IMG/VR virus record: IMGVR_UViG_3300027985_000918
Coordinates: 248,001 to 312,000 of that record
Length of the DNA stretch: 64,000 bases
Reading direction: 5' to 3' (one strand)
Every line of letters begins with the position of its first letter. Within the stretch, counting starts at the first letter, position 1. The notes under the pieces are model-generated. The model had not been told where the DNA came from and did no database searches. It saw nothing but the letters and a program-made list of their open reading frames with translations. Made by a program: the position numbers and the translations under genes. Positions 16,954 through 53,512 of this stretch are shown here, in pieces.

Positions 16954-17189
16954 TAGCTACCTCCCCCGTGCTTAATCAGGGCGAGCTTCTGCAAGGCCTC
17001 AGCCTTCTTGCCTTCCCACTCTGCGAGCTGCTGCTCCAGGATGCTGCGAAGGCTAAGGAGTGCCCGAGCCTGCTCGGTGGCAAATGCTGGACGAAACGTA
17101 GTCCCCCCACCGGCATCCCCCCAGGCCCCAGCCTTCCGGCCAATCTTCTCCAACTCCTGCCGAGCCTCTTCGGGTGTCAACGGTTTCAT
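16953..17189 (-). CDS. Small hypothetical coiled-coil protein
   Basis: 78 aa; overlaps both neighbours (ATGA and TAATG). Confidence 0.65.
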   Translation of the reverse strand: MKPLTPEEARQELEKIGRKAGAWGDAGGGTTFRPAFATEQARALLSLRSILEQQLAEWEGKKAEALQKLALIKHGGGS

Positions 17190-23100: not shown

Positions 23101-26100
23101 CCACCCGATCATCCACGTCGTTGGTCACCAGCATCCGCTGGTGGTCCATCAACCACTGAAGACGGTCGGCATCGGGGTACGGCCCACCCAGCACACCGTC
23201 CACCAGAGTTGCCGCCGTGGGCTCTACCAGGTTGTCAGTCTCCAAGAAGATAAGATCGTTCGAGGGGTCCGCCTCATTGACCACCATGCTCCACAGGTTC
23301 TTAGGCTGCAACACCCCGGTGATCTCATCCTCGTAGCCCGGGGTGGGCCACTCCAACCCCCGACCCACAAAGAACCGGAATTTGCCGTCCTTGTCCCCGA
23401 CGAAGCGTCCGTCGATAGTCTCGGTGATCTGCTCGAAAGCCATGATGGCCTGGTTGTAGTAGTCCAAAAGCACCCGGGCGGCCCGATCTTTGTCCACCAG
23501 GTGGCGGCGCTCCCAGATGAGGCTAGTGTTGCCCTTGTCCCAGTTTTCCTCCCCCTGAGTAGTCGTGGTGAGGGATCCCTTCCCCGCCTGATTGGCCTGA
23601 GCTTCCTTGACCGCCTCCCGAATTGCCTCTGCAAGGAAACTCGTTAGAGTGGGAATGCGGAAGTAGTACGTATCCGGGCTGCGGAAGCTGTATGTGGCCT
23701 GAAGCAGGCCTCCCAGGAGCCCATTGTCCCGATCCGGCAGCGTGTTGTACAGGTAGGTGGCGAACCCCCGGGGCTCTACCACCACTCCATCTTGCACGGT
23801 AGGGCTGAGGGTACGAAGACGGGTGTGGCTCAGGATGAGCTTCTGCCCAGGACCCAAGGGGGCCTGAACCGGCTCCAGCAGCTCAACCACTCCCGTAGTG
23901 GGATCCAGGCTGTACTCGATGTTGGGGATGAGGGTCCGACCCGGCAACTCGTTGCCGTTGACGTCCGTCTCCCCGAAAAGCACCAACTCATACCCCTCGG
24001 TGTCCACCAGCGGGCCGAGGGGGAGGAACGTCCGCACCCCCGGCGGATAGAGCGGCCGGTAGCTCAGTTTGACCGTGGAGACGTTGTCCATCGAAAGGCC
24101 CGTCTCCACTGGGGCGGTGAGCGTGATCTTGGTGTACGTGCCCTCGGGGTTCAGTTCCGCACTGGCGATGGTGAACGGGTAGCCCCCGATCTCCAGGATG
24201 TGCCCGGCGATGGCAAACTGAGTGAGGTTGCCACGGAAGTTGATGGTCTTCTGTCCCTTATTGACGGGCTCGAACGGAAACTCCGATAGAGGGACCGCTT
24301 GCATAAATCCTGCAGGGGCACTGGTCGTGACGGGATTAGTCCCGTCGGGGTCCACCGCAGTAGTAACGGGCCCTGCCGAAATGACCGTCAGGACATCGTG
24401 ACCAGGGGAACGGGTTCCGACCTCTCGGGAGGTCGGGGGGAAAATGTGAACCTTCGTGACATTCCCCGCCTTGACGATGGGCTTGACGGGGTTCAACGGG
24501 TTCCGTTCTTCCAGAGGGGTCGTCCGAGGCGGGAAGTATTCGACCGCCTTCACATAGAAGCAGTTTGCCCCCAAACGGATGAGCTGCCCCGGAAAGAAGT
24601 CTGCCAGTCGGTTTCCCTGGAGCCCAAAGCTATCCACCCCTGCCTTGAGGAAGAAGGGTGGGCGGTACACCGGAGCCGAAGACACGGTATAGGACCGCTC
24701 CCCCCCGTTGGCCTCCAGAACGGCGTAGCTCACCTGGACCGGGACGTGATCCGGAATGGTCTTGGAGAGGAACGTGATCTTGAACGGGTCTCCCGGATCA
24801 TCGGGGGACTCCAGGATGTAATCGTCCCCCTGGAAGTTCTGGATCATGGCCCCGATGAACACCGTGGGATCGATACGGGTGTCCACAGTCCGGCTGTCGG
24901 TGTTGAACGTGAACGTGAAATGGTTGACCCGAGTCGCTTCGGTCTTGGTAACGAAGACCGGCAGGAACTCTTCGACCAGTTCACCCTCCTTGCGCCCTTC
25001 CATGTCAGCCTGGTAGTACCGCACCTCCACCGACTGGAGTGCCTGAAGGGGCTGCTGGAACCCCACGGTGCCTGCAATGGGATTCAAAGACACGTCGAGG
25101 CCATTCTCCGTGATCATCTGCTCGACGAAGTACACCCTCTTTCCGGCATGGGAGATCTGATCAGCACTCCCAATGTTCAGCAGCCCCGAATCCGGGTTGT
25201 ACTCGGCCATCCCGGAAACCATGTCAGCAGAAGCCCGGAACTCTTCCTGGTAGGTAACCCGAGCTTTGGCGTACCTGCTCAGCAGATCATCTGCGAACTT
25301 GATTCTCCCTGCGGGGTCCACCCCCACAGACTGAGTCAGTACCTCGACAGCCCCAGCCGGAACAGGGTCCGAAAAAACCCCGACATGAACAGGGGTGAAC
25401 TTATCCGCCCCAACCCGCAGGGAATACCGGATGCCCGTGAACCTGGTGGATCCCACCCCGGGGACATCCAGAAGGTTGTTTGCGATAGCCCCCAGAACCT
25501 CCCGGCTAAGAGGCGTCAGGATGGCCGAGTTCGTTCCGTCATCATGGGCCAAACCAAACCGGATGGAAATCACCCTCCCTCGGGAGACTGCCCCCTCTAC
25601 ATTGGCGGTGAGGGCCCCTCCCACAAATCCCAGAGGAGAAAGTACGTTGACCTTAAACGGCTCATCGGGAAGGTGGCTGAAGTTCTGGTACACCTGGTCG
25701 GCTACCACCGCCGGGTCGTACACGTCCTCCGAATACCCCCGGTACAGCTCCCACGGAATGGCCTGAAGGGCTTGCGCCAGGAAGGGGGGCTTTACTCCCA
25801 ACTCCGTCCCGCTGCTCACGGATTCCACAAGGTAGGAGCCCGCCTCATCCCCGGACAGGAGCTTAAGGCGATAACCCTCTCGGACAACAGGAAGGTAGAC
25901 TGCGGCACCCCCGGAGAATAGGGGATTTCCTTCCGTGTCCGTGGCCTGCTCTTCCGACGGCTCCAGGAAGTTGGCCGCCGGGTCCGTGAACAGGCTCCCC
26001 CCCGCAGAGTAGGCCCCCCTTCCCCCGAACAAAGCCAGGTCCCCGTACCTCGTAATGAGCACGGCGTTTCCTGGGATCCCGTCGTTGGGGAGCAGGTAAT

Positions 26101-28888
26101 CCTCACCCAACACCTGAAACGAGAACGCCCCCCCCTCGGACACCAGGAGCCCCCCTCCGATCCCTGGAGCATTCAGCAACGAGTTGCCGATGACGGAAGC
26201 AGATCCCAGGTCGATAGTTGTTGTAGGTTGCTGGAAAGTCGTGCTCAGAGAGCCTTCGGCCAGCCACAGGAAACGGCGCTCTGCGAAGTCGTGGAGGATG
26301 TCTTCGTAGTGAATGAGGGGCTTGTTGACTACCACCACCCCGTCCGGGTCTTCAATGGCGGTGACCAGGTTGAAGAACACCCCGTCCGAGTAACCCGCCA
26401 CATCTTGGAGGGGCGGATTCTGAAAGAACACGAAGGGGCCGGGCTGGACGGACTCCTGGACGATGGCGTCTTCGATACGGTCGAACGCCTTGAAATCGGG
26501 AATCCCTTTGGCCCTCCCCCGGTTCCTGGGACTGCGGTACAGCCCCAGGGCAACCCCGGAATCAGGTAGCCAGTTGTCCACTCCGCCCTGCGCCCGCCAA
26601 CCCGGAAGGAACCCGAGCTTGGCTGCCCCGGACAGATCCTTCACTGGCCCGCCCCATCCAACCTCCACCGTCCCCGTCGCCGGATCCCCCGCCTCCAGAA
26701 CGACCGACCCGTTGGAGGCATAGGCCCTACCCGTCCCAGAGATTGCGGCATTGATCGAATCAGCCACTTCCTCCGGGGTGAAGTAGTCCTTGTCTGGGTA
26801 GGCAGTCAACAGGGTGTTCGAGTTCCAAGAGTATCCCGACCCGTCGGTGCTGAAGTACAGCACCTCACCCCCCTCGAACCGGAACACAAACCGGGTCTTG
26901 GAGTACAAGCGGGCGGCCGTCGTGTGGGCAGAAGGCGTCAGGCTGGCCTGGAGGAAATAGGCAGCGTCGGCTCCTTTCTCCTTGAGGTCTGCACGGCTCA
27001 TCTTGAGCACCGACCCCAGACCATCGGAGAACTCACGGGAGATGTAGCAGACCCCCTTGGGGATGCTATGGGAGGTCGAGGGGAGGTCATCCTCCCGGTC
27101 CACCACCACCACCGACATGGCACCCTTGCGGGTGAACACGATGGTGTCCCCTACCGTGTCCTCCACCTGACGGATTCGTCCTTTGGCGTTAGCAGCAAAC
27201 GTATCGCCTCCAGGACGAACATCGGCCGGCGCCCCAGAACCCGCGGGGGCGACCCCTGTGCCGTCGGGGAAATCCATGACCCCCGAAACACCCAACCCCC
27301 GCTGCGGGCTGTTGAGAACGAACTCGTCGGGAAGGACGACAGCATCCGGGATGTACAGCTTCCCGCTGTTCTCCACAACCTGGGCGGGGGCCGTAGTGGG
27401 CTGAGGAAGGCCCGACAGACTGAGGCCGTCGTACACCACTTTGGCACCCAGATAATGCTTGTCGAACCGATCGGAGTCCGGATCCGTACTCCCCACCAGC
27501 CCCGGGGAGAACAGCAGCTTCCCTGTGGACAAAGATACCCCCACCTGGCCATCCGGCATCAACAAACCGGACAGCTCGGCGTCGTCCTCGACCAGGATGG
27601 GGGTCAAATACTTGCGTGACCCCACTCGGAGGAGGGGCCTATCCGTGGGAGACGGGATGGGGGTGATGAACAGAGTGTCGTGCGGGCTCAATTCCCCAAT
27701 GACGCCCGTACTTTCCGGAGCAAAATCACGATTGACGTACCAGACAGTCTTCCCGGCGTGCAGCTCGACGTAGGACGGGTTAAACACCAGCATCCCGTTG
27801 GTTAGGCCAACGACTCCGATGAGCTGGGGCTCCAGGGAGAAGTCAAAGCCTTCCTCCACCTGCTTGTCCAGGCGTACCCCGATCCCCAGAAAACTCCCGT
27901 CGGGGCCTGCTGCGGTACTGAGCCCATCCGGAGAGGACCCCAGACGGATCATGGCGTAGCTGTCAGAGACTGCCCCATTCCCGGGCAGGAAAAAACCGTT
28001 CTTGAGCCCCCTCGGTTTGGGGGATAGCTGGTAGACCTGATCGAACTCCAGACGGCCGAGGTCCCTCGGGGCATTGCCCTTGTACGGCTCCCAACGCTGG
28101 TTCTGCCCGTTCCACCCAAACCTAACTTGGTAACGATCGTTCCTGGTCCAGTAGAACCGGGGAGCAGCAATGGTGTACCGCACCTCGATGACTGTATCAC
28201 CTCGGGCTACACTGAGACCCCCCCCGAGGGCCGTAGAGATGTCACTCGCTACCAGACCGGATCCGGTAGGCCTGAAGATGTTGTCGTCCGTGAGGGTGAC
28301 CAAACCTGAGGAGGGGTCCGAATCCCCTCCCTGAGGCTGAACTACCAGGTATGGGATGTTTCCCTTGCGTCCGGAAGTAGGGTTCTCAGCATCCACCCAG
28401 CCGGCGTCGTCGTACTCCACATCCCCCCGGGCCACTACCAGGAACAGGATGCTCCCGATGCTGCGGAACCCATCGTCCTTGACGACGGCCTTTAGGGTCC
28501 CGTCTACCTGAGTCCCATACCCCGAAGGGATAGGCTGACCCTCGGGCCACGGATCCGGGTCATTGTCCGTGACCGTCAGGGAACCTTGGGGGATGATCCC
28601 CTCTCCCGTATCTACCCACCAGGCGGGGTCGTCGATAAGGGAGAGATTGGATGTGTTCTCCGCCCAGAACATGTACTCGACAGGGGTACTACCGGGGGAA
28701 TTGAGCACGGCCGTGCGGTACTGGTCCGCACGCACGTCCGCAAAGTCGGGGGCACCCAGAGTGTAGTCTGGCGGAAGGTCATCGGAAAGGGCACGGACGA
28801 CTCCACTGTCTGCGTCAGCCGTCTCGGGAGAGTTCGTCGGCGCAGACCGGGGGGGCCGGAGGACGTATCCTGAGAAGTCAAAACCCAT
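17186..28888 (-). CDS. Giant (3900 aa) virion structural protein, probably baseplate-associated
   Basis: Uninterrupted 11.7-kb ORF, Gly/Val/Asp/Pro-rich, located between spike and wedge genes. Confidence 0.8.
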   Translation of the reverse strand: MGFDFSGYVLRPPRSAPTNSPETADADSGVVRALSDDLPPDYTLGAPDFADVRADQYRTAVLNSPGSTPVEYMFWAENTSNLSLIDDPAWWVDTGEGIIPQGSLTVTDNDPDPWPEGQPIPSGYGTQVDGTLKAVVKDDGFRSIGSILFLVVARGDVEYDDAGWVDAENPTSGRKGNIPYLVVQPQGGDSDPSSGLVTLTDDNIFRPTGSGLVASDISTALGGGLSVARGDTVIEVRYTIAAPRFYWTRNDRYQVRFGWNGQNQRWEPYKGNAPRDLGRLEFDQVYQLSPKPRGLKNGFFLPGNGAVSDSYAMIRLGSSPDGLSTAAGPDGSFLGIGVRLDKQVEEGFDFSLEPQLIGVVGLTNGMLVFNPSYVELHAGKTVWYVNRDFAPESTGVIGELSPHDTLFITPIPSPTDRPLLRVGSRKYLTPILVEDDAELSGLLMPDGQVGVSLSTGKLLFSPGLVGSTDPDSDRFDKHYLGAKVVYDGLSLSGLPQPTTAPAQVVENSGKLYIPDAVVLPDEFVLNSPQRGLGVSGVMDFPDGTGVAPAGSGAPADVRPGGDTFAANAKGRIRQVEDTVGDTIVFTRKGAMSVVVVDREDDLPSTSHSIPKGVCYISREFSDGLGSVLKMSRADLKEKGADAAYFLQASLTPSAHTTAARLYSKTRFVFRFEGGEVLYFSTDGSGYSWNSNTLLTAYPDKDYFTPEEVADSINAAISGTGRAYASNGSVVLEAGDPATGTVEVGWGGPVKDLSGAAKLGFLPGWRAQGGVDNWLPDSGVALGLYRSPRNRGRAKGIPDFKAFDRIEDAIVQESVQPGPFVFFQNPPLQDVAGYSDGVFFNLVTAIEDPDGVVVVNKPLIHYEDILHDFAERRFLWLAEGSLSTTFQQPTTTIDLGSASVIGNSLLNAPGIGGGLLVSEGGAFSFQVLGEDYLLPNDGIPGNAVLITRYGDLALFGGRGAYSAGGSLFTDPAANFLEPSEEQATDTEGNPLFSGGAAVYLPVVREGYRLKLLSGDEAGSYLVESVSSGTELGVKPPFLAQALQAIPWELYRGYSEDVYDPAVVADQVYQNFSHLPDEPFKVNVLSPLGFVGGALTANVEGAVSRGRVISIRFGLAHDDGTNSAILTPLSREVLGAIANNLLDVPGVGSTRFTGIRYSLRVGADKFTPVHVGVFSDPVPAGAVEVLTQSVGVDPAGRIKFADDLLSRYAKARVTYQEEFRASADMVSGMAEYNPDSGLLNIGSADQISHAGKRVYFVEQMITENGLDVSLNPIAGTVGFQQPLQALQSVEVRYYQADMEGRKEGELVEEFLPVFVTKTEATRVNHFTFTFNTDSRTVDTRIDPTVFIGAMIQNFQGDDYILESPDDPGDPFKITFLSKTIPDHVPVQVSYAVLEANGGERSYTVSSAPVYRPPFFLKAGVDSFGLQGNRLADFFPGQLIRLGANCFYVKAVEYFPPRTTPLEERNPLNPVKPIVKAGNVTKVHIFPPTSREVGTRSPGHDVLTVISAGPVTTAVDPDGTNPVTTSAPAGFMQAVPLSEFPFEPVNKGQKTINFRGNLTQFAIAGHILEIGGYPFTIASAELNPEGTYTKITLTAPVETGLSMDNVSTVKLSYRPLYPPGVRTFLPLGPLVDTEGYELVLFGETDVNGNELPGRTLIPNIEYSLDPTTGVVELLEPVQAPLGPGQKLILSHTRLRTLSPTVQDGVVVEPRGFATYLYNTLPDRDNGLLGGLLQATYSFRSPDTYYFRIPTLTSFLAEAIREAVKEAQANQAGKGSLTTTTQGEENWDKGNTSLIWERRHLVDKDRAARVLLDYYNQAIMAFEQITETIDGRFVGDKDGKFRFFVGRGLEWPTPGYEDEITGVLQPKNLWSMVVNEADPSNDLIFLETDNLVEPTAATLVDGVLGGPYPDADRLQWLMDHQRMLVTNDVDDRVAASKRRPRIKLLPVYPYFSLQGGVDFKRMSSSHFLSRLFPTQAKAFFLTYPGIGADEATGDPGIYTYGRSIDGGIKRTTGSEIGLVSNPVLGGITNISDSALRPRRARARVWGYFPDGILQDAFDVGVPAADIVEPCMIVTQLPLSEVPVSPESGLLDVSRLISQGGDLADAEAGDPELALPGFVTGDQIFWGQPDGSTHIGQNVSLLSVFGTPVLDTLHVYDVQFGCLIRFADSSGTLLDNPNNILVGTEGILGTPLHEFPLEQGDTIYVSPTLGKGVEISDPPTIAELREMGSAIDIFRNGFDFSVKPDGRIVDTTLPSFDDPYFFGLKEIFGQKAPRPLSPLEGPVEFVYDRTLPLEFPALLGGSTDDDGDYAIPYLRSGNTELDRLGDASVMSNLFGVFAQSGGTYIYPDEIVGNDGEILDTSGNNFADVGTPFQGGPATKEAGVLMAGVDPFPAGVGEEALRPYDLLLMEVGQGTVPVGAEGLLNVAAVASPAAGVAFLEPPRFVTQTTPPVAPGGPTGSPVRYILNNAIVHVDGYVGDDPQNDPVSGCLLYEYDSNGDAVTDTLVLDFSSITQLALNDGTAAGTGNLNSIWSAAGAKANNKITVRFLARDDVLITNTPSGNPMPNGGDELFRIVIQGTDVTVTETVSGLPGLTALGLSAVFGTTDPAPLGAPFEQNRHIVITGASVGSLMDHLLLGLPVAQGSVQVLPGCAAGDQVVISGVVFTAVNGGAVAALQQFDDVAGSGSAIATATSLAAAINDPASQALIQAAAPLNISAVASAVGDLVGLQANHPGDVGELVVTENTGGLRLVVTPMAGDSTSTWFVPYTQLNPLAAGYRRALKYEYDVAIDIDTYNGWAAPRGESDTAYIDEDRLTFHEVIDFRKARLRGSVHPHPGSSTSLETDLLVQEVTCVAGVSSTINRNVNGGAPLTFIGKTAADIANELAGGTWSSPVGGSIKAVAFEGILDANVGATDIKFSAIPSSDVGPLGTICTGSGFMESENNADLSAVQFTLVEGRVMDPTINSGALARVEPGDVLVVKRSNDGTHRACTKAGTYLVKHAVGENDAINHVLQVTLSCTAGGGSGWITEVYPRVVGWDSGTGVLTVTSTSRFPGVGNRVFICRDLTKLSAATAAEYAQALWSGNITFKTPTTFTLNDLRDATGTPVAATDLVNTTGLMVAGHDSLTVDVRGNGLPDSSSVVGHHSLTALQEVIHGFRLVTFEGPGGAVVTYDATAGQITDVGGGGAIEVAEAARVSANQFHADADPVVYAHVAGSIDLSAVPDLDWGSIYDPLGHSAGQWVAALLPNTVVYLGDPTGPTPGFWAQSGIFLEPSFPTPVNSYSFTQARLVERTAAPYPLVGVRDFSDYNSSGVPYANPESVQFEVRRIRRFHRLFNDLGDQFGPLRYAYEIRRGRITTYSTTAKQFGLVEADGFGMTYNADVVTAPLAPDVWNGGETGLLGTNLGPFNSVDVNIHAGDMFRLLDEDGALIEQVPIVGVLSEVELKLEAPGLQTPKATLEANGGMRFEIWLRQAPVPHEQSAEQLLELITFKEVTRTDADYATERGGYVEAVTADYDSVVNRMRDDKNTGSWASKGVLRGDIVILDPTPKIPQSGERGARPIGDVGAYISGGPQRTGYDPGEPNILDDNRGFYRVTDIDGATLVVDGTCTLAGARVGGTTTDVVFPENATYQPILGYSILPTISGSALTGDGREGQMDLRPTKVRETIGGYETYTGDTHSIRPFSYRIIRPSQLFSDEAVDLVLMNRERVLSWIQELRSIMGGRKDGTYWDFQNELHAHDVGLPNDPLDGLGVLGNVSVTSLIGQVNISPYLNSEDCLSILDRRFWVLDRRLDSLMPDTNIGCRTYDGVNPFPTAGDVDLAQPVGAYTSFSADANGGSSVRPVLPERVDIVLDIEDRFRPTRYAWLAYRTDTVRGTLQRIDLFDEELPKRLAEAERVARLEESVENAS

Positions 28889-31893: not shown

Positions 31894-34800
31894 TCAATCC
31901 TCCCCGAACAGATTGTCGAACGCCTGGGTAACCCCCTGCTCTGCCAGCTTGGCTTGGGCCTTGGCCTGCTCGTACTGAGTCAAAGCAGCTCTCTGCCTAG
32001 CGGATTCCCCGGTGGCCCCCTGGACCACGGCGTTACCGAGGTTCTGGAAGGTCGAGATGAGGCTACCCGCAGGGCGCTCCATCGCAGCCCCCCGCAAGGC
32101 ATCCTGGCGCTGCTGCCAGGCCACCGACTTGAACATGGCCTGGTTGGTCAGGAACTGAGTGGCTCTGTCCTCTTCACCAGTCCCATACCCCTTCGGAATC
32201 TGCACCCCGGGCTGGGCGAACTGCAAGAAGTTGGAATCCACGAAGGCTTCGAGCAACAGGTCAGCTTCAGCGGCCTTGCAAGAGCAGACTCGCCCGTCTT
32301 GCTGGTAGCTCAAGTCCGCCAGGGTGAAGGCAGCGTTGTTGACCGGCAGCTTGTGGATGCCCTCCTTGTTCCCGTCCGCAAACCAGTTGCTCAGATTAAG
32401 CTGGAGCAAAGAGGGGTCCTGAGAATTGGGGACGGCAAGGCCCAGGTCAAGGATCTGCTTGTCCGTCAAATTCCGGCGGAGCTGCGCCAAGGCCCTCCTC
32501 TCCACGTCCGTCGTGGCAGCCTTGCCGCTAAGGGGGATCTGCACCCGGACCTTCTTGCCTCCGTTGATCTCCTTCTCCTGCTCCACCGTGATAGTCTTAC
32601 CGGAGATAATCCCGTCCACGATGTCCTCAACCGTCTTCCGGTCCAAGAACTGAAGTGGATCCTGAGCGTGTAGGGAATCCCAAACGCCTCCCGGCTCGAT
32701 GTCCACCCCACGCCCATAGCGGTAGGACCCGACGACCTCGTACCCCTGAGCATCGGACACCGGGAACACGGGGCTGTGGATTTTCCTCCGAATGGTCGAC
32801 TGCTTCTTCTCCCGGGTTGAGCTGTGGGCCAGCACATCCACCTTCCACCGGGCAGCCAACACAGCGTTGAACTCGGCAAAGATCCTCTCAGAGTGGGCGT
32901 CTTCGTACCCGGCTTCCTTGATGGCCTGTACCCAGGCTCCCCGAATACGGGTCAGGTCCTGGAACAGAGACTCGGCCAGCTTCTCACCGACAAACGTCAG
33001 GAGATCCCGGATTGTCTTCTTCCCCCACTTCCCCCCCAGGCTCTTCTGGTCGGATGACCAGAAGAGCTGCGGCGGGCCTCCCGTGACAGGGATTACCCCG
33101 GCAATGCGAGTGTCGTCCAGACGGTAGTTGCTCAGAACTTCCCCGATCTCCAGGAACGACCCCTTGCTGACAACCACGGAGTCCGGAAGTGCGGGGAGCG
33201 TCTGGGGCAAAGGAAGGGTCTTTCCCGAGTCCAGCTCCCGGGCCATCCTATCCGCAGCCACCGAGGCCACGGTGAAGTCCGCTAGGATCGAAGACCACGC
33301 CAACCGATAGAACTCCTGGGTGGTCTGGTCCCCCGAAGGCTCCTTCTTGACGGACTTGGGGTTCAGTCGCTGCTTAAGGCGGAGGAGCACCCCTGGACCC
33401 AAGGTCACCGGCTTGCTGGCTGCCCCAGTATCCGTGGTGCCCTTGGTCTGGGTCATGTCCTGGACCGAGAACATCAACTCTCGGATCTGAGACGTGGGGA
33501 CGATCTCCCCATTCGGCCTAGCGGGGTTTGCCGTCAGCACCCGGATTCCCCGAGTGGGCTGCACCTCTCCCAGAGTGGCCTCCGGCTTCACTGTCCCCGG
33601 AACTACTGCCGAAGGAGTCCGCACGAATCCGGTAACCGTTGTCCCCTGCCATTCCGGGTCGAGGAAGCTGTTCTTCCTCTTGAGCGTAGGGGTGGTTCCG
33701 TCCGGAGGATTGCTGTACTCGACGATTTCCTGCCCCTGGTGCTGCGGGTCGGGATGAGAGGCGGAGTAGTAGCGGTACTGCCCAGGCTGAGTCCCATTGC
33801 TGAGGCTCGCCTTCTTTTCGGACAGCATGTCCAGCAGGGCATGAGTCTCTGGGATACGGCGGAGGTCCTGCCCACCCGAAAGGAAGTACCTCTCCCCGAT
33901 GGCCTTGATGAGAAACTGGAGCTGGTAGACCCCGTCTCCAGTGTCCTGCCCAAACGAGGCCTCGGTCTCGGCCCTAACGGCCTCCACCTCTCGGAGGACA
34001 CCCCGAATCTCTGCCAGCTTGGCCCTCTTCTTCTCCAGCAGGGCAGCCTTCTTCGACCCATCCCCCGCCCTGGCGATTGAACTGGTCAGCGAGTTCACCT
34101 CGCCCTGGAGAGCGACTAGGCTCTTCTGCTTGGCTTCAATCTTCTGACCGGCTGCCCGCTGCCTCTTGGCGTAAGCCTCTCCAGCAGCGATGATGTCGAT
34201 GGTCGTCTTGGGCACAACTCCAGGCGTCCCTGAGCGTTTCGTAGCCCCCTTGGCGGCCACCTCTTCGGGCAGACGGGTGTCGTCCGACAGGTAGAACTCA
34301 ACCGTGGTGGCTTTCGTCTCACCTCCCGATTCCTTGGTGGGCAAGGTCAGTGTGTACCGGCCATCCCCCTGGTCCGCTACCAGACCGATTCCTTTCTGGC
34401 TGCCCATCTGGAGGATATTCCGCAGGACAACAGGGTCATCCAGCCGCTCGATGTCTGCGCCCACCACCCAAAACAGAGGGTTGATGGCGTAAGGGTCGAG
34501 GGCCATAACTACGTTCGGGAATCCCGCCAGACGGGGATGGCCCGTCATATCAGCCACATGCAAAGGGCGGGGTGGGAGGACGGTGTTTGCCAGATCGATA
34601 GCGTCGATACCCGTCCCTTCGGGACGCCCGGGGGCGTAAAACTTCGCCCGCTTGCCCACGAGCTGAAGGTTGGTGGTACACTGCCCCCCCACGCTGTGGC
34701 TGTGGCTGAACCCGTTGCAGTAGTAAAAAGCATCTAGGTACTTGATGTACACAGGGTATCCGGGCCGCAACTCGGGGCGGACCGGGATAGTTACCTGAGC

Positions 34801-37140
34801 TGCCTTGCTCGGGGCATTCAAAATGTCCAGGCGGTTAATTGCCGAGAAAAACATCGACTTGGGGTCGTTGAAGTAGGCCGTCTCAAATGGGGCTGGGCGC
34901 CACCCGAACTGAGCCACCAAACGGTAGTCGATGTACTGACCTCGAACACCCCACTCGTTCTCGACCCCCGTCCCCTGAAGGTTCTTGAACTGGCTGCCTT
35001 TGACAGTGGCGTAGGTGGCCTGAGGCTCCTTCTCGTCTGTAGAGATCGAGATGATGTCGACGTCCTCGATGCGGTAGATCCTGGAACTGGAGGTATCCAG
35101 GTTGTACATCGGGGGCTTGAAGACGAAATCCCCATCCACATCCTGGTAAAACTCAAACCCCGTGATTTCCATAACCGCCTGGGCGATGTCGAGCTTGGAC
35201 CCGTACACCGACTCGAACATGGCAGGGGTTCCCCAATTGCCAATATCACTGACAAACGCCTGCATTTCTGCCAGGTTAAGCTCGAACTTGGTACCGCCCT
35301 TGGAATTGGAGTTACCGCTCGTGTTCCGAGCGAACAGGAGAGCTTCCAGTTTCCTCTGGTTGAACAGCCCCACACTGACAGCGTCCTCCATGATCTCCTT
35401 AGCCCGACCCTTCCGGGAGCTGGGATCGGAAAACCGGAACCTGACAAGCTGCTTGAGGGAGTCTGTGCTGTTACGGCCGAGAAACGTGCTCTGGGCAGCC
35501 GAAAACAGCTCCCCGCTGGCGCCGTGCATCCTCAGCTTGACCATCCGCTGGGCGAACCGCTTCTCCCAGTACCGAATGTTCAGGCTAAACAAGGACTCTC
35601 CGGCCACCTCAGAAACTGCCGACTGGTTGGACTTCGACGACATGGCCCAGCCAACGCCGCCCGCAGCTCCAACCATGTCGTGATGTAGGGTGTACATAAT
35701 CTGATAGGGGTGCATCCCCGTAAAATTGTGACCCACCATCGAAGTTTTGAGCTTCGAGTTGGAGGGCCTAGCTCCGAAGATGGAGGCATTGGTCGAGATA
35801 GTGTGGTACTGCCAGAAGTGCAACATCGAGACGGCGTTGACCGTCACCGTGTTGACGCCCCCCGACCAAGAATGAGCGACCTGAGTAACCACCCCGTGGA
35901 AAACGTGGTAGTAGGGGTAGCTCAGCAGATTTTCGATGCCCTTTCCTCCCAGCCCGTACTGATCCAGGAGAGAACCATTTGCGCCAACCCCAAAGGGACG
36001 AACAGGCACCAGATCCCCCCCAGAAGGCTCACCAGAGTCCTCCAACTCGGTGTTGGAGGCTGGGGGCTGAGGGCTGAAATCCCCCAAGTGCTCATTCCAG
36101 GGTTGCACCGATCCATTCGGCGGAGGCAGCTCTGCCACCCGCCCCTCCAAAGCAGAGAACCACGCCTGCCGCTGAGCGCCGGACTGGTTCTCACCCCCGA
36201 CCCAGACCCACTTGCGCTGGCTTCGGTGGTCCATGTGGGGGACATCGCTCCACTGGGGATTAGCGTTTGGCTCTTGGCCCCCCTTGAGATACATGCCAGA
36301 CCCACCGGGCGGAAGGTGCCCCGTCCGCTGAAGCCTTTGCATCGACGCCCACACCACAGTGCGATCCACGGCCTTGCCATTGGACGTAACGTACATATCA
36401 ACGGCTTGCCCAGTGTTATGGGCCGAATTCTCCACATGACCCCGGGCGGACACCCCCCCGTTTCCGGTAGCCCTAATGTTGACGTTCGTATAGCCCTGCT
36501 GCTCCAGGTACTGGTGCAAAGTGCTCATGGAGGCGGCGGTCTTATCGAGGTTGCTCGCAAACTGCTGGCGGCTGACCCCAGTCTCCGTCGTCCACTTTTC
36601 TGTCATATAGGGGGGGCTCTTCCCCGGCTCCAAGTACCCATACTCCCGCAGCTCTGCAATTCCCCTAGACCCAAACAGGGCCTCCCTCCCATAGCGCCCG
36701 CTACCCCCCTTGGCAGACTTCTGTCCAGAAAACTGGGCAGGTGGCGAAAGGGTCATTGCCTCCCCTGCTACCCCAAGACCCGCTTTCACCTGTGGCTCCG
36801 CCAGATTGTGAAACAACCCCTTCACGGGGAAATAACCCCGCATGTAGATGTGAACTTCGAGACCAGGGGTCAGGATGAACTTGGCATCCCGGGCAAAACT
36901 GTCCGAGTGGTGCAAAGGGATGGACAAAGTGAAGTTGGCCGATGCCGACCCCGGGTCAGTACCCGCATCCACCGACACCTCGGTGATGAACCTCTGGATG
37001 TCGATCCTACCGTTGCACTTTGGGCACCCCGGCAACGTGGTATCCCCGTTGATGTACACCAGAGCATCGGGGGTATGCTGCACCAGCTCCCGGCTGTCCA
37101 GTCGCCAAGTGCCAACGTATGGGCGATTCTCGATGCTCAT
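31894..37140 (-). CDS. Baseplate hub (gp27/gpD-like) protein with inserted M15-type Zn peptidase domain
   Basis: 1748 aa; GFEFYQDVDGDFVFKPPMY and IPVRPELRPGYPVYI hub-like motifs; SAHNTGQAVD...PHMDHR peptidase motif at residues about 239-306. Confidence 0.75.
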   Translation of the reverse strand: MSIENRPYVGTWRLDSRELVQHTPDALVYINGDTTLPGCPKCNGRIDIQRFITEVSVDAGTDPGSASANFTLSIPLHHSDSFARDAKFILTPGLEVHIYMRGYFPVKGLFHNLAEPQVKAGLGVAGEAMTLSPPAQFSGQKSAKGGSGRYGREALFGSRGIAELREYGYLEPGKSPPYMTEKWTTETGVSRQQFASNLDKTAASMSTLHQYLEQQGYTNVNIRATGNGGVSARGHVENSAHNTGQAVDMYVTSNGKAVDRTVVWASMQRLQRTGHLPPGGSGMYLKGGQEPNANPQWSDVPHMDHRSQRKWVWVGGENQSGAQRQAWFSALEGRVAELPPPNGSVQPWNEHLGDFSPQPPASNTELEDSGEPSGGDLVPVRPFGVGANGSLLDQYGLGGKGIENLLSYPYYHVFHGVVTQVAHSWSGGVNTVTVNAVSMLHFWQYHTISTNASIFGARPSNSKLKTSMVGHNFTGMHPYQIMYTLHHDMVGAAGGVGWAMSSKSNQSAVSEVAGESLFSLNIRYWEKRFAQRMVKLRMHGASGELFSAAQSTFLGRNSTDSLKQLVRFRFSDPSSRKGRAKEIMEDAVSVGLFNQRKLEALLFARNTSGNSNSKGGTKFELNLAEMQAFVSDIGNWGTPAMFESVYGSKLDIAQAVMEITGFEFYQDVDGDFVFKPPMYNLDTSSSRIYRIEDVDIISISTDEKEPQATYATVKGSQFKNLQGTGVENEWGVRGQYIDYRLVAQFGWRPAPFETAYFNDPKSMFFSAINRLDILNAPSKAAQVTIPVRPELRPGYPVYIKYLDAFYYCNGFSHSHSVGGQCTTNLQLVGKRAKFYAPGRPEGTGIDAIDLANTVLPPRPLHVADMTGHPRLAGFPNVVMALDPYAINPLFWVVGADIERLDDPVVLRNILQMGSQKGIGLVADQGDGRYTLTLPTKESGGETKATTVEFYLSDDTRLPEEVAAKGATKRSGTPGVVPKTTIDIIAAGEAYAKRQRAAGQKIEAKQKSLVALQGEVNSLTSSIARAGDGSKKAALLEKKRAKLAEIRGVLREVEAVRAETEASFGQDTGDGVYQLQFLIKAIGERYFLSGGQDLRRIPETHALLDMLSEKKASLSNGTQPGQYRYYSASHPDPQHQGQEIVEYSNPPDGTTPTLKRKNSFLDPEWQGTTVTGFVRTPSAVVPGTVKPEATLGEVQPTRGIRVLTANPARPNGEIVPTSQIRELMFSVQDMTQTKGTTDTGAASKPVTLGPGVLLRLKQRLNPKSVKKEPSGDQTTQEFYRLAWSSILADFTVASVAADRMARELDSGKTLPLPQTLPALPDSVVVSKGSFLEIGEVLSNYRLDDTRIAGVIPVTGGPPQLFWSSDQKSLGGKWGKKTIRDLLTFVGEKLAESLFQDLTRIRGAWVQAIKEAGYEDAHSERIFAEFNAVLAARWKVDVLAHSSTREKKQSTIRRKIHSPVFPVSDAQGYEVVGSYRYGRGVDIEPGGVWDSLHAQDPLQFLDRKTVEDIVDGIISGKTITVEQEKEINGGKKVRVQIPLSGKAATTDVERRALAQLRRNLTDKQILDLGLAVPNSQDPSLLQLNLSNWFADGNKEGIHKLPVNNAAFTLADLSYQQDGRVCSCKAAEADLLLEAFVDSNFLQFAQPGVQIPKGYGTGEEDRATQFLTNQAMFKSVAWQQRQDALRGAAMERPAGSLISTFQNLGNAVVQGATGESARQRAALTQYEQAKAQAKLAEQGVTQAFDNLFGED

Positions 37141-39277: not shown

Positions 39278-42200
39278 TCACCCCACTCTTCCGGCCATGA
39301 CCCGCTTGAGCTTAGATTGGTTCTGGGTCCACCCGTGGGGGCTGGCGTACTCGTGGTAGTTGATGTACACGTCACCGCCCCCTCCCCCGCCTCGACTTAG
39401 CGGACCACCAGCCTTGCTAGCGACCACCTGCACATCATCCTGAGTGCTAATCCTCTGTCCGTACACACCACCTTTACCAATGTGCATTAGGTAATCTTGT
39501 GCCACACCAGCAGCTTCAAACACGGGGAGGCCCATCTCCGTGAACTTCTCACGGACGGACTTACCGCCGACAACCGTGTCCAGATGCTTAGCAATCTCTG
39601 CAGGCATCTCCCCCGACTCCCGATATTGGGTTGCCAAACCCAAAAAATCGTCCCGGAGGAGTCCTGTCTCAACTCCGGAGAGTCCTGCCGCCATCTGGGT
39701 AGCCATATTCTCCGCAGTCAGCATTGTGGCCTGCTTTCGCCACTCCTCCCCAATAGCCTTGGGTGCTTCCCCGCCCTTCCCATGAAGCCTTTGGGTTCGA
39801 CGCCAGTCCTCCCTCCCATAAGCCATCAAAGCATCTTCCTGGGCCTTCTTGATCATGTCCTCACCGGACATTGGCGCAGTGCCAACACTGGCCCCCCTAC
39901 CCCCCTGAGCCCCCAAACCCACGGTTGCCAGCAGCCCAAAGTGCCTTTCCCGTGCCTGGGACTGACGAGCAACCAGCTCTTCTTCGGACCCCACCCCCTC
40001 CCGAAGAAGCATTCTCTGCACGCCTTTTTTCTTGATAGCGGAGATCTGCTCCTTGGACATACCAGCTTTCCCACGGAGAGCCTTTTCGATACTCTTGGGA
40101 CCCACACCAGCCTCAATATCCCTCCTCAGCTCACTAGCCCCCTTGTCCGTAAACCACCCGCTCTTGTTATAGCTCTGAGCTTCCCGCAGATGCTCCTCCT
40201 TGACCGCCTTACGGCCACGGAGAACCCTAAGCTCCTCAGCTTTAACCTTCAAGGCTGCCTGCGCCCTTTCTCTGTCGGGTCCCGAGGAAGCGTTCATTTC
40301 CTTACGAAGTTCACTCATCTCCTGGGAAATACCCCGCTCCTTCGCCCTCATGTCTCTAATCTCACGGGTATATCCGGAAACAATCCTCTCCCTCTCAGCT
40401 TTCTCACCGCCGCTAAGTCCACCCATCCAAGATGAGATCCGCTCTACCGAGGTATAGATCTGCTCCAGCCAATACTCCACGCCTCTCTCCAGAAGAGACG
40501 CAATATCCGTAGTGTTGGCGGCGATCTCTGCCGCCAACTTGATGTCGGCAGGTACCGCCTGCTGTGCGGCCTCCTTAAACACCTGACCCTGGGTCTGAAT
40601 ATAGTCCTCCAGGCTCTTGAGGCTGCTAGTACCCCACTCGATCTCTCCGGTGCTTTCATTGAACGAAGCGGCCAAGACACGCCCCTGATCGTCAATAGCA
40701 GCCCCGAACGCCTTAGCCTGCTCTCTCTGCTGCTCCGGAGTAACCTGCTTACCCTCCATCTTCCTAAGAGTGTTCCAGTTGCCATACATGGCCTCTGAAA
40801 TCCGCAAAAGTTGCTCCCTCTCCTCACCCGTAACCCCAGCCACACCCTCAAACCCCATCATCTCCCGGGGGTTCATCATGTGGAGTGGCTTTCCGATAAT
40901 AGTTTGTCCGTGAGCCATCTTGGCTGCCAACTTTCCACCCATGTCCAGAGACCCCATCCGGACAGCCCTAGCACCCCGACCACCTACAGCACCCTCGGCA
41001 ACGTCCATCAAATTCGTAAGGGAGCGAGTTAGGTCGTGCTGTCCCGTAAGACGCATACTAGCCAGCAAGCCTTCTCTCTGCTTACGGCCCATACTCCCAA
41101 GTCTCTTGGATAGACCGGCTCCCGTTGCAGTATCCAAGTCCGAAAAACCGAGGAGACCCATAATTCGGGCCTGTGCCCCCTTATCCTGCATGGTTCTGAG
41201 TTTCGAGATGAAATCCGTTCCGGTAGCCTCAGCAGACCTAGTGAAAATGCCTTTGCTCCCCCTAGTGAGCATGTCCCTCTTCCAACGGTCCTGCATGGAC
41301 TCCCCAGCAAACCCCTTGGTAAGCTGCTGAAGAAAATCACCGCCCGTCTTAGCACCGAGAACCTGACCAAGACGGATGAGCAAACCACCGGCCTCTTCAA
41401 GACGGACGTTGTACATGCCCATTCCGGATGTGGCCTGAAGAATCATGCCGTAGAATCGCTTTACTCCGAACCCAGACTCCTTGGCAGCCATCGTAACTCC
41501 GGACAATCCTTCGTTGATGTACTGAAGGTCAGCCCCCAGGTCCTCCATCCACGACCCCATATTCCCGGCCATGTCTTGTGCAGAGACCCCCAGGAGCTTT
41601 GAATAAGCCAGAGCGGATTGGGTATACTCCCGCAACCTCTCCATCTCATCATTGAATCCCGCAGCCTCCGCCCTCATCTCCCTCAGAGTCTTCCCCGCAT
41701 CAGCATAGGCACCAAGGATCACCAAATGGTCCTTAGCGGTTGTCCCCCAGATGTTGTTGAAGGCAAAGGCCCCTTCCCCTGCGGTAAATGTCCTTCGCAC
41801 ATCGGCGATTTTTTTGCCTACGTCGTCGAACACACTCCCTAGTTCAGCCCCAGCTATCCCGCTTTCCAGAATAGTCCGGTTCAACTGCTTCATCTGGGAT
41901 TCTGCCGAGATGAAAATGGCCACCAAAGCTGCTACGGAGCCCACCAAGGCCCCCACTGCCAAGATGTAGGGACCGAGCTTAGACAAAAGGCCACCCACCT
42001 CACCCAACGCCTTGGCAAACCCTCCGCTTCCCTTGGACCCTGCCTTGATTGCTGCTCCCCCAGCCGCCTGGACCCCTTGCCCCACCCCCTTGATGGCACC
42101 AGAGAAATCTCCCCCCCTGAGCTGCTCGAACAGCCCCTTGGCGCCGTGAGCACCCGCCCCGAGGAGACCGCTAACCCCTCGGTACCCCTGAGCTGCTTGC

Positions 42201-53494: not shown

Positions 53495-53512
53495 CTTCGT
53501 ACCTCTCTTCAA

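What the first reader, a model, noticed from the sequence alone, without database searches (positions are those of the whole stretch)
36196..36573. M15-type Zn peptidase inserted within the baseplate hub
Seen: S-A-H241-N-T-G-Q-A-V-D248 and P-H302-M-D, bounded by Gly/Pro-rich linkers that interrupt the hub N-terminal domain (RGYFPVKG...PYYHVFHGVV). Known: SxHxxGxAxD plus HxD/HxH defines peptidase M15 (LAS) peptidoglycan hydrolases. Inference: a swappable virion lysin cassette carried on the hub, unlike T4 where the lysozyme is on gp5.
Basis: partly seen in the sequence, partly recalled or inferred. Interest (0 to 1): 0.65.

Follow-up and report, generated by a model that had tools for sequence, protein, structure and literature searches.

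The report
Swappable wall-cutting enzyme in phage hub
The tail-tip hub protein of a 402-kb phage carries a zinc-peptidase-like cell-wall-cutting domain spliced into one of its loops, and related phages carry other wall-cutting enzymes, or nothing, at the same spot.

Summary
The gene at window 31894-37140 (-) encodes a 1748-aa protein. An insert-free homologue of its N-terminal region folds as a gp27/Mu gp44/VgrG-type baseplate hub (Foldseek E 4e-14).

About 280 residues (117-397) are absent from insert-free homologues. They lie between two near-invariant motifs: RGYFPVKG at 101 and PYYHVFHGVV at 409. Residues 149-348 fold confidently (pLDDT >90). The best structural match is the Streptomyces albus Zn DD-peptidase, MEROPS M15A (Z 10.0). 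Hedgehog-N and phage M15 endolysins follow.

H241, D248 and H302 are each kept in 42 of 43 homologues, and D304 in all 43. One homologue has lost all three putative ligands together. No Pfam M15 model matches directly. However, a profile of the domain retrieves genuine Peptidase_M15_3 and M15_2 proteins (hhalign 99.85%).

Among 120 hub homologues the same site holds:
- this domain (44)
- Phage_lysozyme2 (16)
- Amidase_2 (12)
- three further probable wall hydrolases
- nothing (8, with only the 21-residue basal spacer)

The insert type changes at least 49 times on the backbone tree. The nearest backbone relative (89% identity) carries a lysozyme instead.

Enzyme activity, zinc binding and the bond cleaved are untested. 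I rate this a new variant of a known kind, the virion-associated lysin.

The parts
31894..37140 (-). Gene for the 1748-aa baseplate hub protein (P0001). Its ATG overlaps the stop of the upstream 443-aa gene by 4 nt.
   Evidence: ORF list and translation. 279 homologues of 1000-1900 aa on contigs up to 528 kb.
34504..37140 (-). Residues 1-879: hub region of the gp27 / Mu gp44 / VgrG-N fold, including the inserted domain.
   Evidence: AF2 model of the equivalent insert-free region P0113:1-600. Foldseek against PDB gives 70 hits at E<=1e-3. Top hits are 9gtr_q (3.9e-14), 3cdd, 1wru (Mu gp44), VgrG1 and T4 gp27.
36817..36840 (-). Upstream anchor motif RGYFPVKG (residues 101-108), the end of a hub beta-strand.
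   Evidence: Found in all 120 listed homologues with at most 3 substitutions, at position 101 in most (75-104 in the rest).
36697..36816 (-). N-terminal linker (residues 109-148), predicted disordered. Insert-specific sequence begins at about residue 116.
   Evidence: pLDDT below 50 at residues 122-145. G+P is 25%. DNA homology to the P0013 locus stops at window 36796.
36097..36696 (-). Folded LAS-fold (M15A / Hedgehog-N-like) zinc-peptidase-like domain, residues 149-348.
   Evidence: pLDDT above 90. Z 10.0 to 1lbu. The profile retrieves PF08291 and PF05951 proteins. hhalign 99.85%.
36397..36426 (-). S239-x-H241-x-x-G244-x-A246-x-D248: the first two putative Zn ligands (H241, D248).
   Evidence: H241 42/43, G244 43/43, D248 42/43. 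Aligns with SLHYEGRAVD of Indian and Sonic hedgehog and with SxHxxGxAxD of M15_3 proteins.
36289..36306 (-). G279-G-S-G282-M-Y284: the GGxGxY motif shared with M15_3 and M15_2 proteins.
   Evidence: G282 and Y284 invariant, G279 and G280 40/43 each. Aligns with GGLGxY.
36229..36237 (-). H302-M-D304: putative third Zn ligand (H302) and an invariant Asp (D304).
   Evidence: H302 42/43, D304 43/43. Aligns with the HYD of M15_3 and M15_2 proteins. H302 lies in a beta-strand of the model.
35950..36096 (-). C-terminal linker (residues 349-397), partly disordered. Its last ~20 residues (consensus PSLLxxxGLxGxGIE) are conserved in homologues of all insert classes.
   Evidence: pLDDT below 50 at residues 361-367 and 384-386, and about 50 on average across 358-388. 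G+P is 29%. DNA homology to the P0013 locus resumes at window 35973. Consensus.
35887..35916 (-). Downstream anchor motif PYYHVFHGVV (residues 409-418), the start of the next hub beta-strand.
   Evidence: Found in all 120 homologues. It lies 21 to 388 residues after the first anchor.

Best explanation
The 1748-aa protein is the central baseplate hub of a contractile-tailed huge phage. The record is a 402,383-bp virus genome with direct terminal repeats.

A loop between two beta-strands of the hub's N-terminal domain has received a self-contained domain of about 200 residues, held by two flexible linkers of about 30-50 residues. The domain has the LAS fold (lysostaphin / D-Ala-D-Ala peptidase / Sonic hedgehog) and is closest to MEROPS M15A.

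H241, D248 and H302 are predicted to hold one Zn2+. The invariant D304 and the GGxGxY loop complete the active site.

Because the hub is a trimer, three copies would sit at the tail tip. After sheath contraction drives the tip through the outer layers, they would cut peptide stems or cross-links of peptidoglycan locally, so that the tube can reach the membrane. This is the role the gp5 lysozyme plays in T4 and that tail-associated lysins play in siphophages.

The loop is a recombination hot spot. The conserved flanks (RGYFPVKG-LYSNLAEP upstream, PSLL..GL.G.GIE..LAYPYYHVFHGVV downstream) let whole enzyme cassettes be exchanged between related phages, probably to match the wall chemistry of the host.

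Shown here: the fold, motif conservation, homology to M15_3 and M15_2, the hub fold, the insertion site and the cassette exchange.

Inferred: Zn binding, catalysis, the bond cleaved, the trimeric copy number, a role at entry, and the adaptive reason for the exchange.
For: Hub identity:
- Foldseek of the insert-free N-terminus gives E 3.9e-14 to 1e-8 against CIS, Mu gp44, VgrG and T4 gp27 hubs.
- The gene lies downstream of a 1097-aa gene that I take for the tape measure by its size and position only (no family match). In the same minus-strand gene block lie a Baseplate_J gene (E 2.7e-19) and, more weakly, a gp25-like sheath initiator (E 5e-5, below Pfam's cut-off).

Insertion:
- The distance between anchors ranges from 21 to 388 residues in 120 homologues.
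- BLAST against insert-free P0113 joins P0001 residue 126 to residue 398.

Fold and homology of the insert:
- AF2 core pLDDT above 90.
- 1lbu Z 10.0 and Hedgehog-N Z about 6. ChiX, LysECD7, Ply500, LysB4, MepA, T5 endolysin and VanX score Z 4-6.
- The profile against PDB sequences hits Hedgehog-N at E 4e-4 across the GH..SxHxxGxAvD segment.
- BFVD hits are phage 'Peptidase M15A, C-terminal' proteins and gp5 OB-fold proteins.
- Exhaustive HMMER gives 290 hits, including standalone PF08291 and PF05951 proteins. hhalign E 1.4e-30.

Active site:
- H241, D248 and H302 are each kept in 42 of 43, and D304 in 43 of 43.
- The single exception, P0048, has lost H241, D248 and H302 together. This is expected if they form one site.

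Wall-hydrolase role:
- The alternative inserts at the same site are Phage_lysozyme2 and Amidase_2, both above Pfam cut-off, plus weak SLT, glucosaminidase and Hydrolase_2-like classes.
- A homologue with an empty site has Peptidase_M23 elsewhere in the protein.
- Other carriers of this domain also have Amidase_2.

Exchange:
- There are 49 class changes on the backbone tree. The minimum possible is 9, and branches with SH-like support of at least 95% force at least 16 changes for this class alone.
- P0013 has 89% backbone identity but a lysozyme insert. DNA homology breaks exactly at window 36796 and 35973.
Against: - No Pfam, NCBIfam or PHROGs peptidase model matches the domain itself, even at E 0.1 to 1.
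- Foldseek E-values against PDB are weak, with a best of 0.047.
- The SGYR-x-P-x-x-N segment that precedes SxH in M15_3 and M15_2 proteins is absent. It is replaced by a shorter GG..G-H stretch resembling Hedgehog, whose peptidase activity is itself debated.
- Distances between the putative ligands could not be measured.
- No biochemical, proteomic or structural data exist for this uncultivated phage.
- The insertion loop's orientation in the assembled baseplate (outside, lumen or buried) is unknown.
Confidence: 0.75

Rival explanations
1. The domain is a catalytically silent LAS fold that serves as a peptidoglycan-binding or other adhesion or structural module on the tail tip. It would be comparable to the signalling-only view of Hedgehog-N.
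For: - Sequence profiles match Hedgehog-N better than any solved M15 enzyme.
- The substrate-binding SGYR..N segment of M15_3 is missing.
- One homologue, P0048, keeps the domain although all three ligand residues are replaced, so the fold can persist without the metal site.
Against: - The three ligand positions and D304 are kept in 42-43 of 43 sequences at 24% mean identity, which argues for selection on the metal site.
- Every identifiable alternative insert at the site is an enzyme class, not a binding module.
Confidence: 0.12
2. The domain is an active peptidoglycan peptidase, but its main role is lysis from within at the end of infection, or it serves both roles, rather than local digestion at entry.
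For: Six common lysin families (PF08291, PF01464, PF00959, PF01510, PF01551, PF13539) have no match elsewhere in the 402-kb record. The domain profile finds only the hub gene.
Against: - The domain is embedded in a 1748-aa structural protein with no signal or holin-linked context.
- Many endolysin families were not searched.
- CheckV rates the record 76% complete.
- Insert-free hubs exist, so their phages must lyse by other means.
Confidence: 0.08
3. The domain is a peptidase that acts on a phage or host protein, for example maturation of tail proteins, and not on the cell wall.
For: LAS enzymes are peptidases. The neighbouring genes encode very large tail proteins that might need processing.
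Against: - All characterised M15 relatives retrieved act on peptidoglycan peptides that contain D-amino acids.
- Exchange with lysozyme, amidase and transglycosylase-like cassettes at the same site only makes sense for a shared wall substrate.
Confidence: 0.03
4. The motifs are a chance resemblance in a low-complexity spacer, and there is no inserted domain.
For: There are no direct database family hits.
Against: - The AF2 fold is confident, with Z 10 to 1lbu.
- There are 290 HMMER hits, 107 of them at E<=1e-10.
- hhalign gives 99.85%.
- Insert-free homologues exist.
Confidence: 0.01

Closest known systems
Zn D-Ala-D-Ala carboxypeptidase of Streptomyces albus G (PDB 1lbu; MEROPS M15A), with the Pfam families Peptidase_M15_3 (PF08291) and Peptidase_M15_2 / DUF882 (PF05951, MepK-like)
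   Same: - LAS fold (Z 10.0, 123 aligned residues).
- Shared motifs: SxHxxGxAxD, GGxGxY and HxD, then a conserved Trp.
- Profile-profile probability 99.85%.
   Different: - No Pfam model reaches even E 0.1 on the hub domain.
- The SGYR-x-P-x-x-N segment is replaced by a short GG..GH stretch.
- There is an extra N-terminal helical part (residues 149-215).
- It is embedded in a 1748-aa structural protein rather than being a small secreted or standalone enzyme.
Hedgehog N-terminal signalling domain (Shh, Ihh, Dhh; Hedgehog/DD-peptidase fold)
   Same: - It is the best sequence-profile match in the PDB (E 4e-4), aligning GH(x4)S-x-H-x-x-G-x-A-V-D with G-HHSEESLHYEGRAVD.
- Z 5.6-6.1 over about 100 residues.
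   Different: - The C-terminal motif is H-x-D, not H-x-H.
- GGxGxY is present here.
- The context is a phage tail protein, with no signalling or autoprocessing.
T4 gp5 lysozyme on the gp27-gp5 cell-puncturing device
   Same: A wall-degrading enzyme domain is built into the central hub-spike complex of a contractile tail, presumably in three copies, and is used at entry.
   Different: - In T4 the enzyme is a T4L-type muramidase placed after the OB-fold of the spike protein gp5.
- Here it is a LAS peptidase-like domain inserted in a loop about 110 residues into the gp27/gp44-like hub fold.
- The enzyme type varies between close relatives.
Tail-associated lysins (Tal) of siphophages and gp5-OB-fold proteins with an M15A domain (for example BFVD A0A1S5R3Y7 of Pseudomonas phage pf16)
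   Same: They have a hub- or spike-type N-terminus plus a peptidoglycan hydrolase module. M15A-like folds on gp5-type proteins were retrieved by structure. Modular exchange of lysin domains is a known theme; this last point is from my own knowledge.
   Different: - Known Tal proteins carry the lysin C-terminally, after the hub domain.
- Here the lysin is an internal loop insertion with conserved recombination flanks.
- There are at least six enzyme classes plus empty sites in one orthologous hub family of huge phages.

Membership tests
LAS / Hedgehog-DD-peptidase fold (MEROPS clan MD) | Central antiparallel beta-sheet packed against helices, superposable on solved LAS enzymes | tested here: met
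   AF2 core pLDDT above 90. 1lbu Z 10.0, rmsd 3.1, 123 residues. Hedgehog-N, ChiX, LysECD7, Ply500, LysB4, MepA, T5 endolysin and VanX score Z 4-6. All top Foldseek rows are LAS proteins, although E is 0.047 or worse.
LAS / Hedgehog-DD-peptidase fold (MEROPS clan MD) | H-x(3-6)-D motif supplying two Zn ligands | tested here: met
   H241-x6-D248, each kept in 42 of 43. It aligns with the ligand motif of Hedgehog and of M15_3 proteins.
LAS / Hedgehog-DD-peptidase fold (MEROPS clan MD) | Third His ligand on a later strand, placed next to the first two | tested here: inconclusive
   H302 is kept in 42 of 43, lies in a strand and aligns with the His of HYD in M15_3 and M15_2 proteins. It is lost together with H241 and D248 in P0048.
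LAS / Hedgehog-DD-peptidase fold (MEROPS clan MD) | Binds one catalytic Zn2+ | not testable with these tools
   This needs metal analysis or a structure of the expressed domain.
Peptidase M15, subfamily A-like (Pfam PF08291 Peptidase_M15_3 / PF05951 Peptidase_M15_2) | Match to the family HMM above the gathering score | tested here: not met
   No M15 family is listed for P0001 or P0001:140-420 at E<=0.1. PF08291 and PF13539 have no match in the whole 402-kb record.
Peptidase M15, subfamily A-like (Pfam PF08291 Peptidase_M15_3 / PF05951 Peptidase_M15_2) | Detectable homology to family members through profiles | tested here: met
   The A2 profile hits standalone proteins at E 1e-6 to 1e-10. Of 25 such proteins, 14 are PF08291 and 12 are PF05951. 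hhalign gives 99.85%, E 1.4e-30. That second set was selected by the first profile, so the hhalign figure is not independent.
Peptidase M15, subfamily A-like (Pfam PF08291 Peptidase_M15_3 / PF05951 Peptidase_M15_2) | SGYR-x-P-x-x-N segment upstream of SxH | tested here: not met
   The standalone consensus is SGYRxPxxNxxxGGxxxSxH. The hub domain has GNGGVSARGHVENSAH with no YR..N.
Peptidase M15, subfamily A-like (Pfam PF08291 Peptidase_M15_3 / PF05951 Peptidase_M15_2) | GGxGxY loop and HxD(R)G..W C-terminal motif | tested here: met
   G279 G280 x G282 x Y284, H302 x D304 and W311 are conserved in 40-43 of 43 sequences and are aligned with the family motifs.
Peptidase M15, subfamily A-like (Pfam PF08291 Peptidase_M15_3 / PF05951 Peptidase_M15_2) | Hydrolysis of peptidoglycan peptide bonds | not testable with these tools
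   This needs a zymogram or muropeptide analysis.
Baseplate hub (T4 gp27 / Mu gp44 / P2 gpD / VgrG N-terminal) | Hub fold | tested here: met
   Model of insert-free P0113:1-600 (pLDDT 72.7). There are 70 PDB hits at E<=1e-3. TM-scores normalised to the target are 0.63-0.71 for 3cdd, 9g8s_q and 1wru.
Baseplate hub (T4 gp27 / Mu gp44 / P2 gpD / VgrG N-terminal) | Position in a tail/baseplate gene block | tested here: met
   On the same strand lie a 1097-aa gene taken for the tape measure by size and position only, a 266-aa gene with a weak tail-tube-initiator hit (E 0.03) and a 443-aa gene upstream. Baseplate_J (E 2.7e-19) and a gp25-like sheath initiator (E 5e-5, below cut-off) lie downstream.
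Baseplate hub (T4 gp27 / Mu gp44 / P2 gpD / VgrG N-terminal) | Trimer at the tip of the tail tube in the virion | not testable with these tools
   The phage is uncultivated and has no virion data.
T4 gp5-type spike lysozyme | Lysozyme domain following the N-terminal OB-fold of the spike protein | tested here: not met
   The insert lies between two strands of the hub fold, about 110 residues from the N-terminus. It is a LAS peptidase-like domain, not a lysozyme.

The most novel reading that the evidence does not exclude
One loop of the baseplate hub of a widespread lineage of huge phages is a dedicated exchange site for cell-wall hydrolase cassettes. It holds at least six enzyme classes, including a previously unclassified Hedgehog-like branch of the M15/LAS peptidases, and there is a second site further along the protein. 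The cassette identity would be a primary, rapidly evolving determinant of which wall chemotypes, and therefore which hosts, these phages can penetrate.
Probability: 0.3. Interest if true: 0.7.

Novelty: new variant of a known kind. Interest (0 to 1): 0.55.

Why it matters
Virion-borne wall hydrolases decide whether a phage can get its DNA through the cell wall. They are also sought after as enzybiotics.

Three results stand out:
- A single orthologous hub from uncultivated phages (their contigs reach 528 kb) shows a natural plug-and-play site. Unrelated wall hydrolases have been swapped in and out there dozens of times, even between hubs that are almost identical.
- This gives a ready-made map of permissive insertion boundaries for engineering tail-tip enzymes.
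- It gives a set of about 44 divergent LAS peptidase domains that no current family model recognises. They sit in sequence between bacterial M15A enzymes and animal Hedgehog.

It also offers a testable link between lysin type and host wall chemistry in a phage group with almost no experimental data.

Tried and rejected
Searches that found nothing or little:
- Direct family scans of the whole protein and of residues 140-420 or 150-340 against Pfam, PHROGs and NCBIfam gave only noise: Pro-kuma_activ at E 0.038 and PRK02399 at E 0.0087.
- phmmer of residues 150-340 against PDB sequences gave nothing below E 1.
- The word-index search with the domain alignment alone, restricted to candidates of 110-350 aa, gave no hit. 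Only the exhaustive HMMER search found the standalone relatives.
- Foldseek of the domain against PDB gave no hit at E<=0.001. The relationship became clear only with the exhaustive VIA-align search.
- Two literature searches for a description of lysin insertions in jumbo-phage hubs found nothing specific. This is not proof that none exists.

Method dead ends:
- First-pass single-linkage clustering of whole inserts merged all classes, because the linker ends are conserved. It was redone on trimmed cores.
- I looked for model coordinates to measure ligand distances, but none are exposed.

Insert classes left unresolved:
- Classes D and F gave no credible sequence match to any PDB entry.
- Their assignment to glucosaminidase and Hydrolase_2 rests on weak Pfam hits and language-model look-alikes scoring below 0.9.

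Hypothesis rejected:
- I considered that the protein might be a tape measure or a gp5-like spike rather than a hub. The fold search rejects this.


Full report
**1. What is at the coordinates**

The finding lies inside one long minus-strand ORF, window 31894..37140, encoding a 1748-aa protein, P0001.

The residue numbers quoted are exact:
- SAHNTGQAVD occupies 239-248, giving H241 and D248.
- PHMD occupies 301-304, giving H302 and D304.
- RGYFPVKG starts at 101 and PYYHVFHGVV at 409.

The window is part of an IMG/VR virus record of 402,383 bp with direct terminal repeats. GC content is about 60%. All large genes around the finding are on the minus strand.

**2. No direct family hit, but a large homologue family**

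Pfam, PHROGs and NCBIfam give nothing meaningful for the whole protein or the putative domain. phmmer against PDB sequences also gives nothing.

A search with residues 1-520 found 279 homologues. Of the 120 listed, nearly all are 1350-1930 aa (two shorter ones are about 1000 aa). They come from metagenomic contigs up to 528 kb.

In all 120 listed homologues the two anchor motifs are present with at most three substitutions. The distance between them ranges from 21 to 388 residues. Eight homologues have only 21 residues between the anchors, and eight more have 32-53. The segment is therefore a true insertion into a conserved scaffold.

BLAST of P0001 against insert-free P0113 aligns residues 1-126 and then resumes at 398.

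**3. The scaffold is a baseplate hub**

An AF2 model of insert-free P0113:1-600, built on a 120-sequence alignment, has pLDDT 72.7. It gives 70 Foldseek PDB matches at E<=1e-3:
- the hub-spike proteins of contractile injection systems (9gtr_q at 3.9e-14, and 7b5h)
- the MuSo2 and Mu gp44 hubs (3cdd and 1wru, with target-normalised TM 0.63-0.66)
- phiCD508, pyocin and diffocin hubs
- VgrG1
- T4 gp27 (2z6b and 1k28, about 1e-9)

The insertion site lies between strand 95-101 and strand 131-147 of that model.

The gene context agrees. Upstream on the same strand are a 1097-aa gene that I take for the tape measure (by size and position only; it has no family match), a 266-aa gene and a 443-aa gene. 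Downstream are a Baseplate_J gene (E 2.7e-19) and, more weakly, a gp25-like sheath-initiator gene (E 5e-5, below Pfam's cut-off).

**4. The insert is a LAS-fold, M15A-like domain**

Forty-three homologues share P0001's insert type. The conservation figures below are on the trimmed domain alignment.
- Invariant positions are G244, G282, Y284 and D304.
- H241, D248, H302 and W311 are each kept in 42 of 43, at only 24% mean column identity.

The AF2 model of residues 109-408 has mean pLDDT 83. Residues 149-348 are above 90, and the two linkers are below 50.

The exhaustive structural search of 48,161 PDB representatives puts the Streptomyces albus Zn DD-peptidase 1lbu (MEROPS M15A) first, with Z 10.0, rmsd 3.1 A and 123 residues. 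This is clearly above the next rows:
- Hedgehog-N, Z about 6
- VldE C-domain, 5.4
- LysECD7, 5.8, and ChiX, 5.6
- Ply500, 4.9, and LysB4, 4.7
- MepA, 4.5
- T5 endolysin, 4.2
- VanX, 4.0

Foldseek alone was weak, with a best E of 0.047, but all its top rows were the same LAS proteins.

In the viral structure library the matches are phage 'Peptidase M15A, C-terminal' proteins and gp5 OB-fold proteins.

A sequence profile of the insert matches Hedgehog-N in the PDB at E 4e-4, across the segment GH(x4)SxHxxGxAvD.

**5. Bridge to the curated M15 families**

The word-index search with the domain alone found nothing. I therefore used the exhaustive HMMER search. It gave 290 hits at E<=1e-3, of which 107 were at E<=1e-10.

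Besides hub homologues, the hits include proteins of other architectures and small standalone proteins of 140-250 aa.
- Of 25 such short proteins, 14 match Pfam Peptidase_M15_3 (PF08291) and 12 match Peptidase_M15_2 (PF05951).
- Their consensus is SGYRxPxxNxxxGGxxxSxHxxGxAxD ... GGLGxY ... HYDxRG..W.
- hhalign between the hub-insert alignment and this set gives 99.85% probability and E 1.4e-30. It aligns H241, D248, GGxGxY and H302-x-D304 with the family motifs. The second set was chosen by the first profile, so this figure is not independent. The Pfam identities of its members are independent.

The hub domain differs from these proteins in two ways:
- It lacks the SGYR..N segment and has a Hedgehog-like GG..GH stretch instead.
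- It has an added N-terminal helical part.

The domain is thus homologous to M15A-type enzymes, but it is a divergent branch that current family models miss.

**6. Active site**

I could not obtain model coordinates.

Indirect evidence is positive:
- H241 sits just before the central strand that contains D248.
- H302 lies in a later strand.
- Both alignments to known LAS proteins place these residues on ligand positions.
- The structural alignments to Sonic hedgehog end such that H302 would fall on the third ligand, if the last strand is gapless. The Shh residue numbers here are from my memory.
- The single homologue that departs, P0048, has K, Q and Y at all three positions at once while keeping D304. 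This is the pattern expected when a metal site is abandoned as a unit.

D299, which would give a VanX-like D/E-x-x-H motif, is not conserved. The invariant D304 is the better candidate for the catalytic acid or base, or possibly a ligand.

**7. The site is a cassette exchange point**

After trimming the conserved linker ends, the inserts fall into these classes:
- the LAS class: 44 homologues
- Phage_lysozyme2, PF18013: 16
- Amidase_2, PF01510: 12 (E 2.7e-15 for the representative scanned)
- class D: 11, with a weak Glucosaminidase match (E 0.002) and language-model look-alikes at 0.89
- class E: 9, with weak SLT, MltC, EmtA and goose-lysozyme matches (E 5e-4 to 0.03)
- class F: 9, with only a Hydrolase_2 look-alike at 0.87, which is a lead only
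- three singletons
- 16 short or empty sites

I built a FastTree tree from 562 backbone columns with the insert region removed.
- The insert class changes at least 49 times. The minimum possible is 9, and the shuffled mean is 70.
- Branches with SH-like support of at least 95% alone force at least 16 changes for the LAS class, 11 for lysozyme2 and 7 for Amidase_2.
- P0001's nearest backbone relative, P0013, has 89% identity but carries the lysozyme.
- P0006/P0042 and P0040/P0092 have almost identical backbones with different enzymes.

At the DNA level, homology between the window and the P0013 contig is 70-78% on both sides. It breaks at window 36796 and resumes at 35973, which is about residues 116-389.

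A homologue with a nearly empty first site, P0098, has a Peptidase_M23 domain at residues 1091-1185. That position corresponds to a gap in the alignment with P0001. A second lysin site therefore exists.

**8. Mechanism proposed**

Three tethered LAS peptidase domains would sit on the trimeric hub. They would cut peptidoglycan peptides locally after tail contraction, so that the tube can reach the membrane. This is functionally equivalent to the T4 gp5 lysozyme and to the tail-associated lysins of siphophages.

The conserved flanks allow homologous recombination to replace the cassette.

The fold, the homology, the insertion site and the exchange are shown here. Zinc binding, catalysis, bond specificity, oligomeric state, orientation of the loop and the adaptive value of the exchange are inferred.

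**9. Other lysins in the genome**

Six common lysin families have no match elsewhere in the record (Peptidase_M15_3, SLT, Phage_lysozyme, Amidase_2, Peptidase_M23, Peptidase_M15_4). The domain profile hits only the hub gene.

This leaves open a dual role in lysis. I weight it low, because many lysin families were not searched and insert-free hubs exist in related phages.

**10. Relatives and literature**

In GenBank phages the hub core matches only two records:
- an unannotated 485-kb uncultured phage, LR745208.1, at 49% identity
- weakly, a 'tail protein' of the 308-kb Tunturiibacter phage Tunturi_5

Two full-text searches found no description of lysin insertions in jumbo-phage hubs. This does not prove that none exists.

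**11. Verdict**

- The domain is a divergent M15A/Hedgehog-like LAS domain that fails the Pfam M15 thresholds.
- It is larger than the marked span.
- Activity is unproven.
- Lysin domains, including M15A-like ones, on hub or spike proteins are a known principle.

What is new is the internal loop position, the divergent LAS branch, and the scale of cassette exchange in one orthologous hub of huge phages.

Noticed in passing
window 56970-57998 (-): A 342-aa protein matches Pfam Volactin (PF25216, an archaeal actin homologue) over its full length, E 2.2e-69. An actin-like protein in a 402-kb phage may serve in genome or compartment positioning.
   Followed up: no
window 17186-28888 (-): A 3900-aa ORF with no Pfam match lies between the hub operon and the baseplate wedge genes. 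It is one of several giant structural-module genes here, alongside those of 1778, 1171, 1013 and 1007 aa.
   Followed up: no
P0098 residues 1091-1185 (hub homologue; corresponds to about P0001 1343-1383, window about 32992-33114): A homologue whose first insertion site is nearly empty (32 aa) carries a Peptidase_M23 domain, E 2e-34, at a second site in the C-terminal half. The hub family therefore has at least two lysin insertion sites.
   Followed up: partly
P0048 residues 160-397 (hub homologue): This is the only LAS-class insert in which H241, D248 and H302 are all replaced (by K, Q and Y), while D304 is kept. It is probably a decayed, non-catalytic copy that is retained in the hub.
   Followed up: partly
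P0125 (1270 aa) and P0131 (969 aa): Proteins of other architectures combine the same LAS domain with an Amidase_2 domain. The divergent LAS branch also occurs in other large, probably bifunctional lytic proteins outside the hub family.
   Followed up: partly
window 48176-53512 (-): A 1778-aa ORF has weak DUF2460 and DUF4815 matches, E 8e-5 and 8e-4, both below cut-off. It may be another tail or baseplate component.
   Followed up: no
window 40001-42000: There is a strong local GC skew (-0.25) and a dip in GC content (0.55) inside the 1097-aa gene that I take for the tape measure.
   Followed up: no
whole record G000 (402,383 bp): There is no match to PF08291, PF01464, PF00959, PF01510, PF01551 or PF13539 anywhere in the genome; even the hub's own LAS domain escapes the two M15 models. 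The phage's endolysin, if separate, belongs to another family or an unrecognised one.
   Followed up: partly
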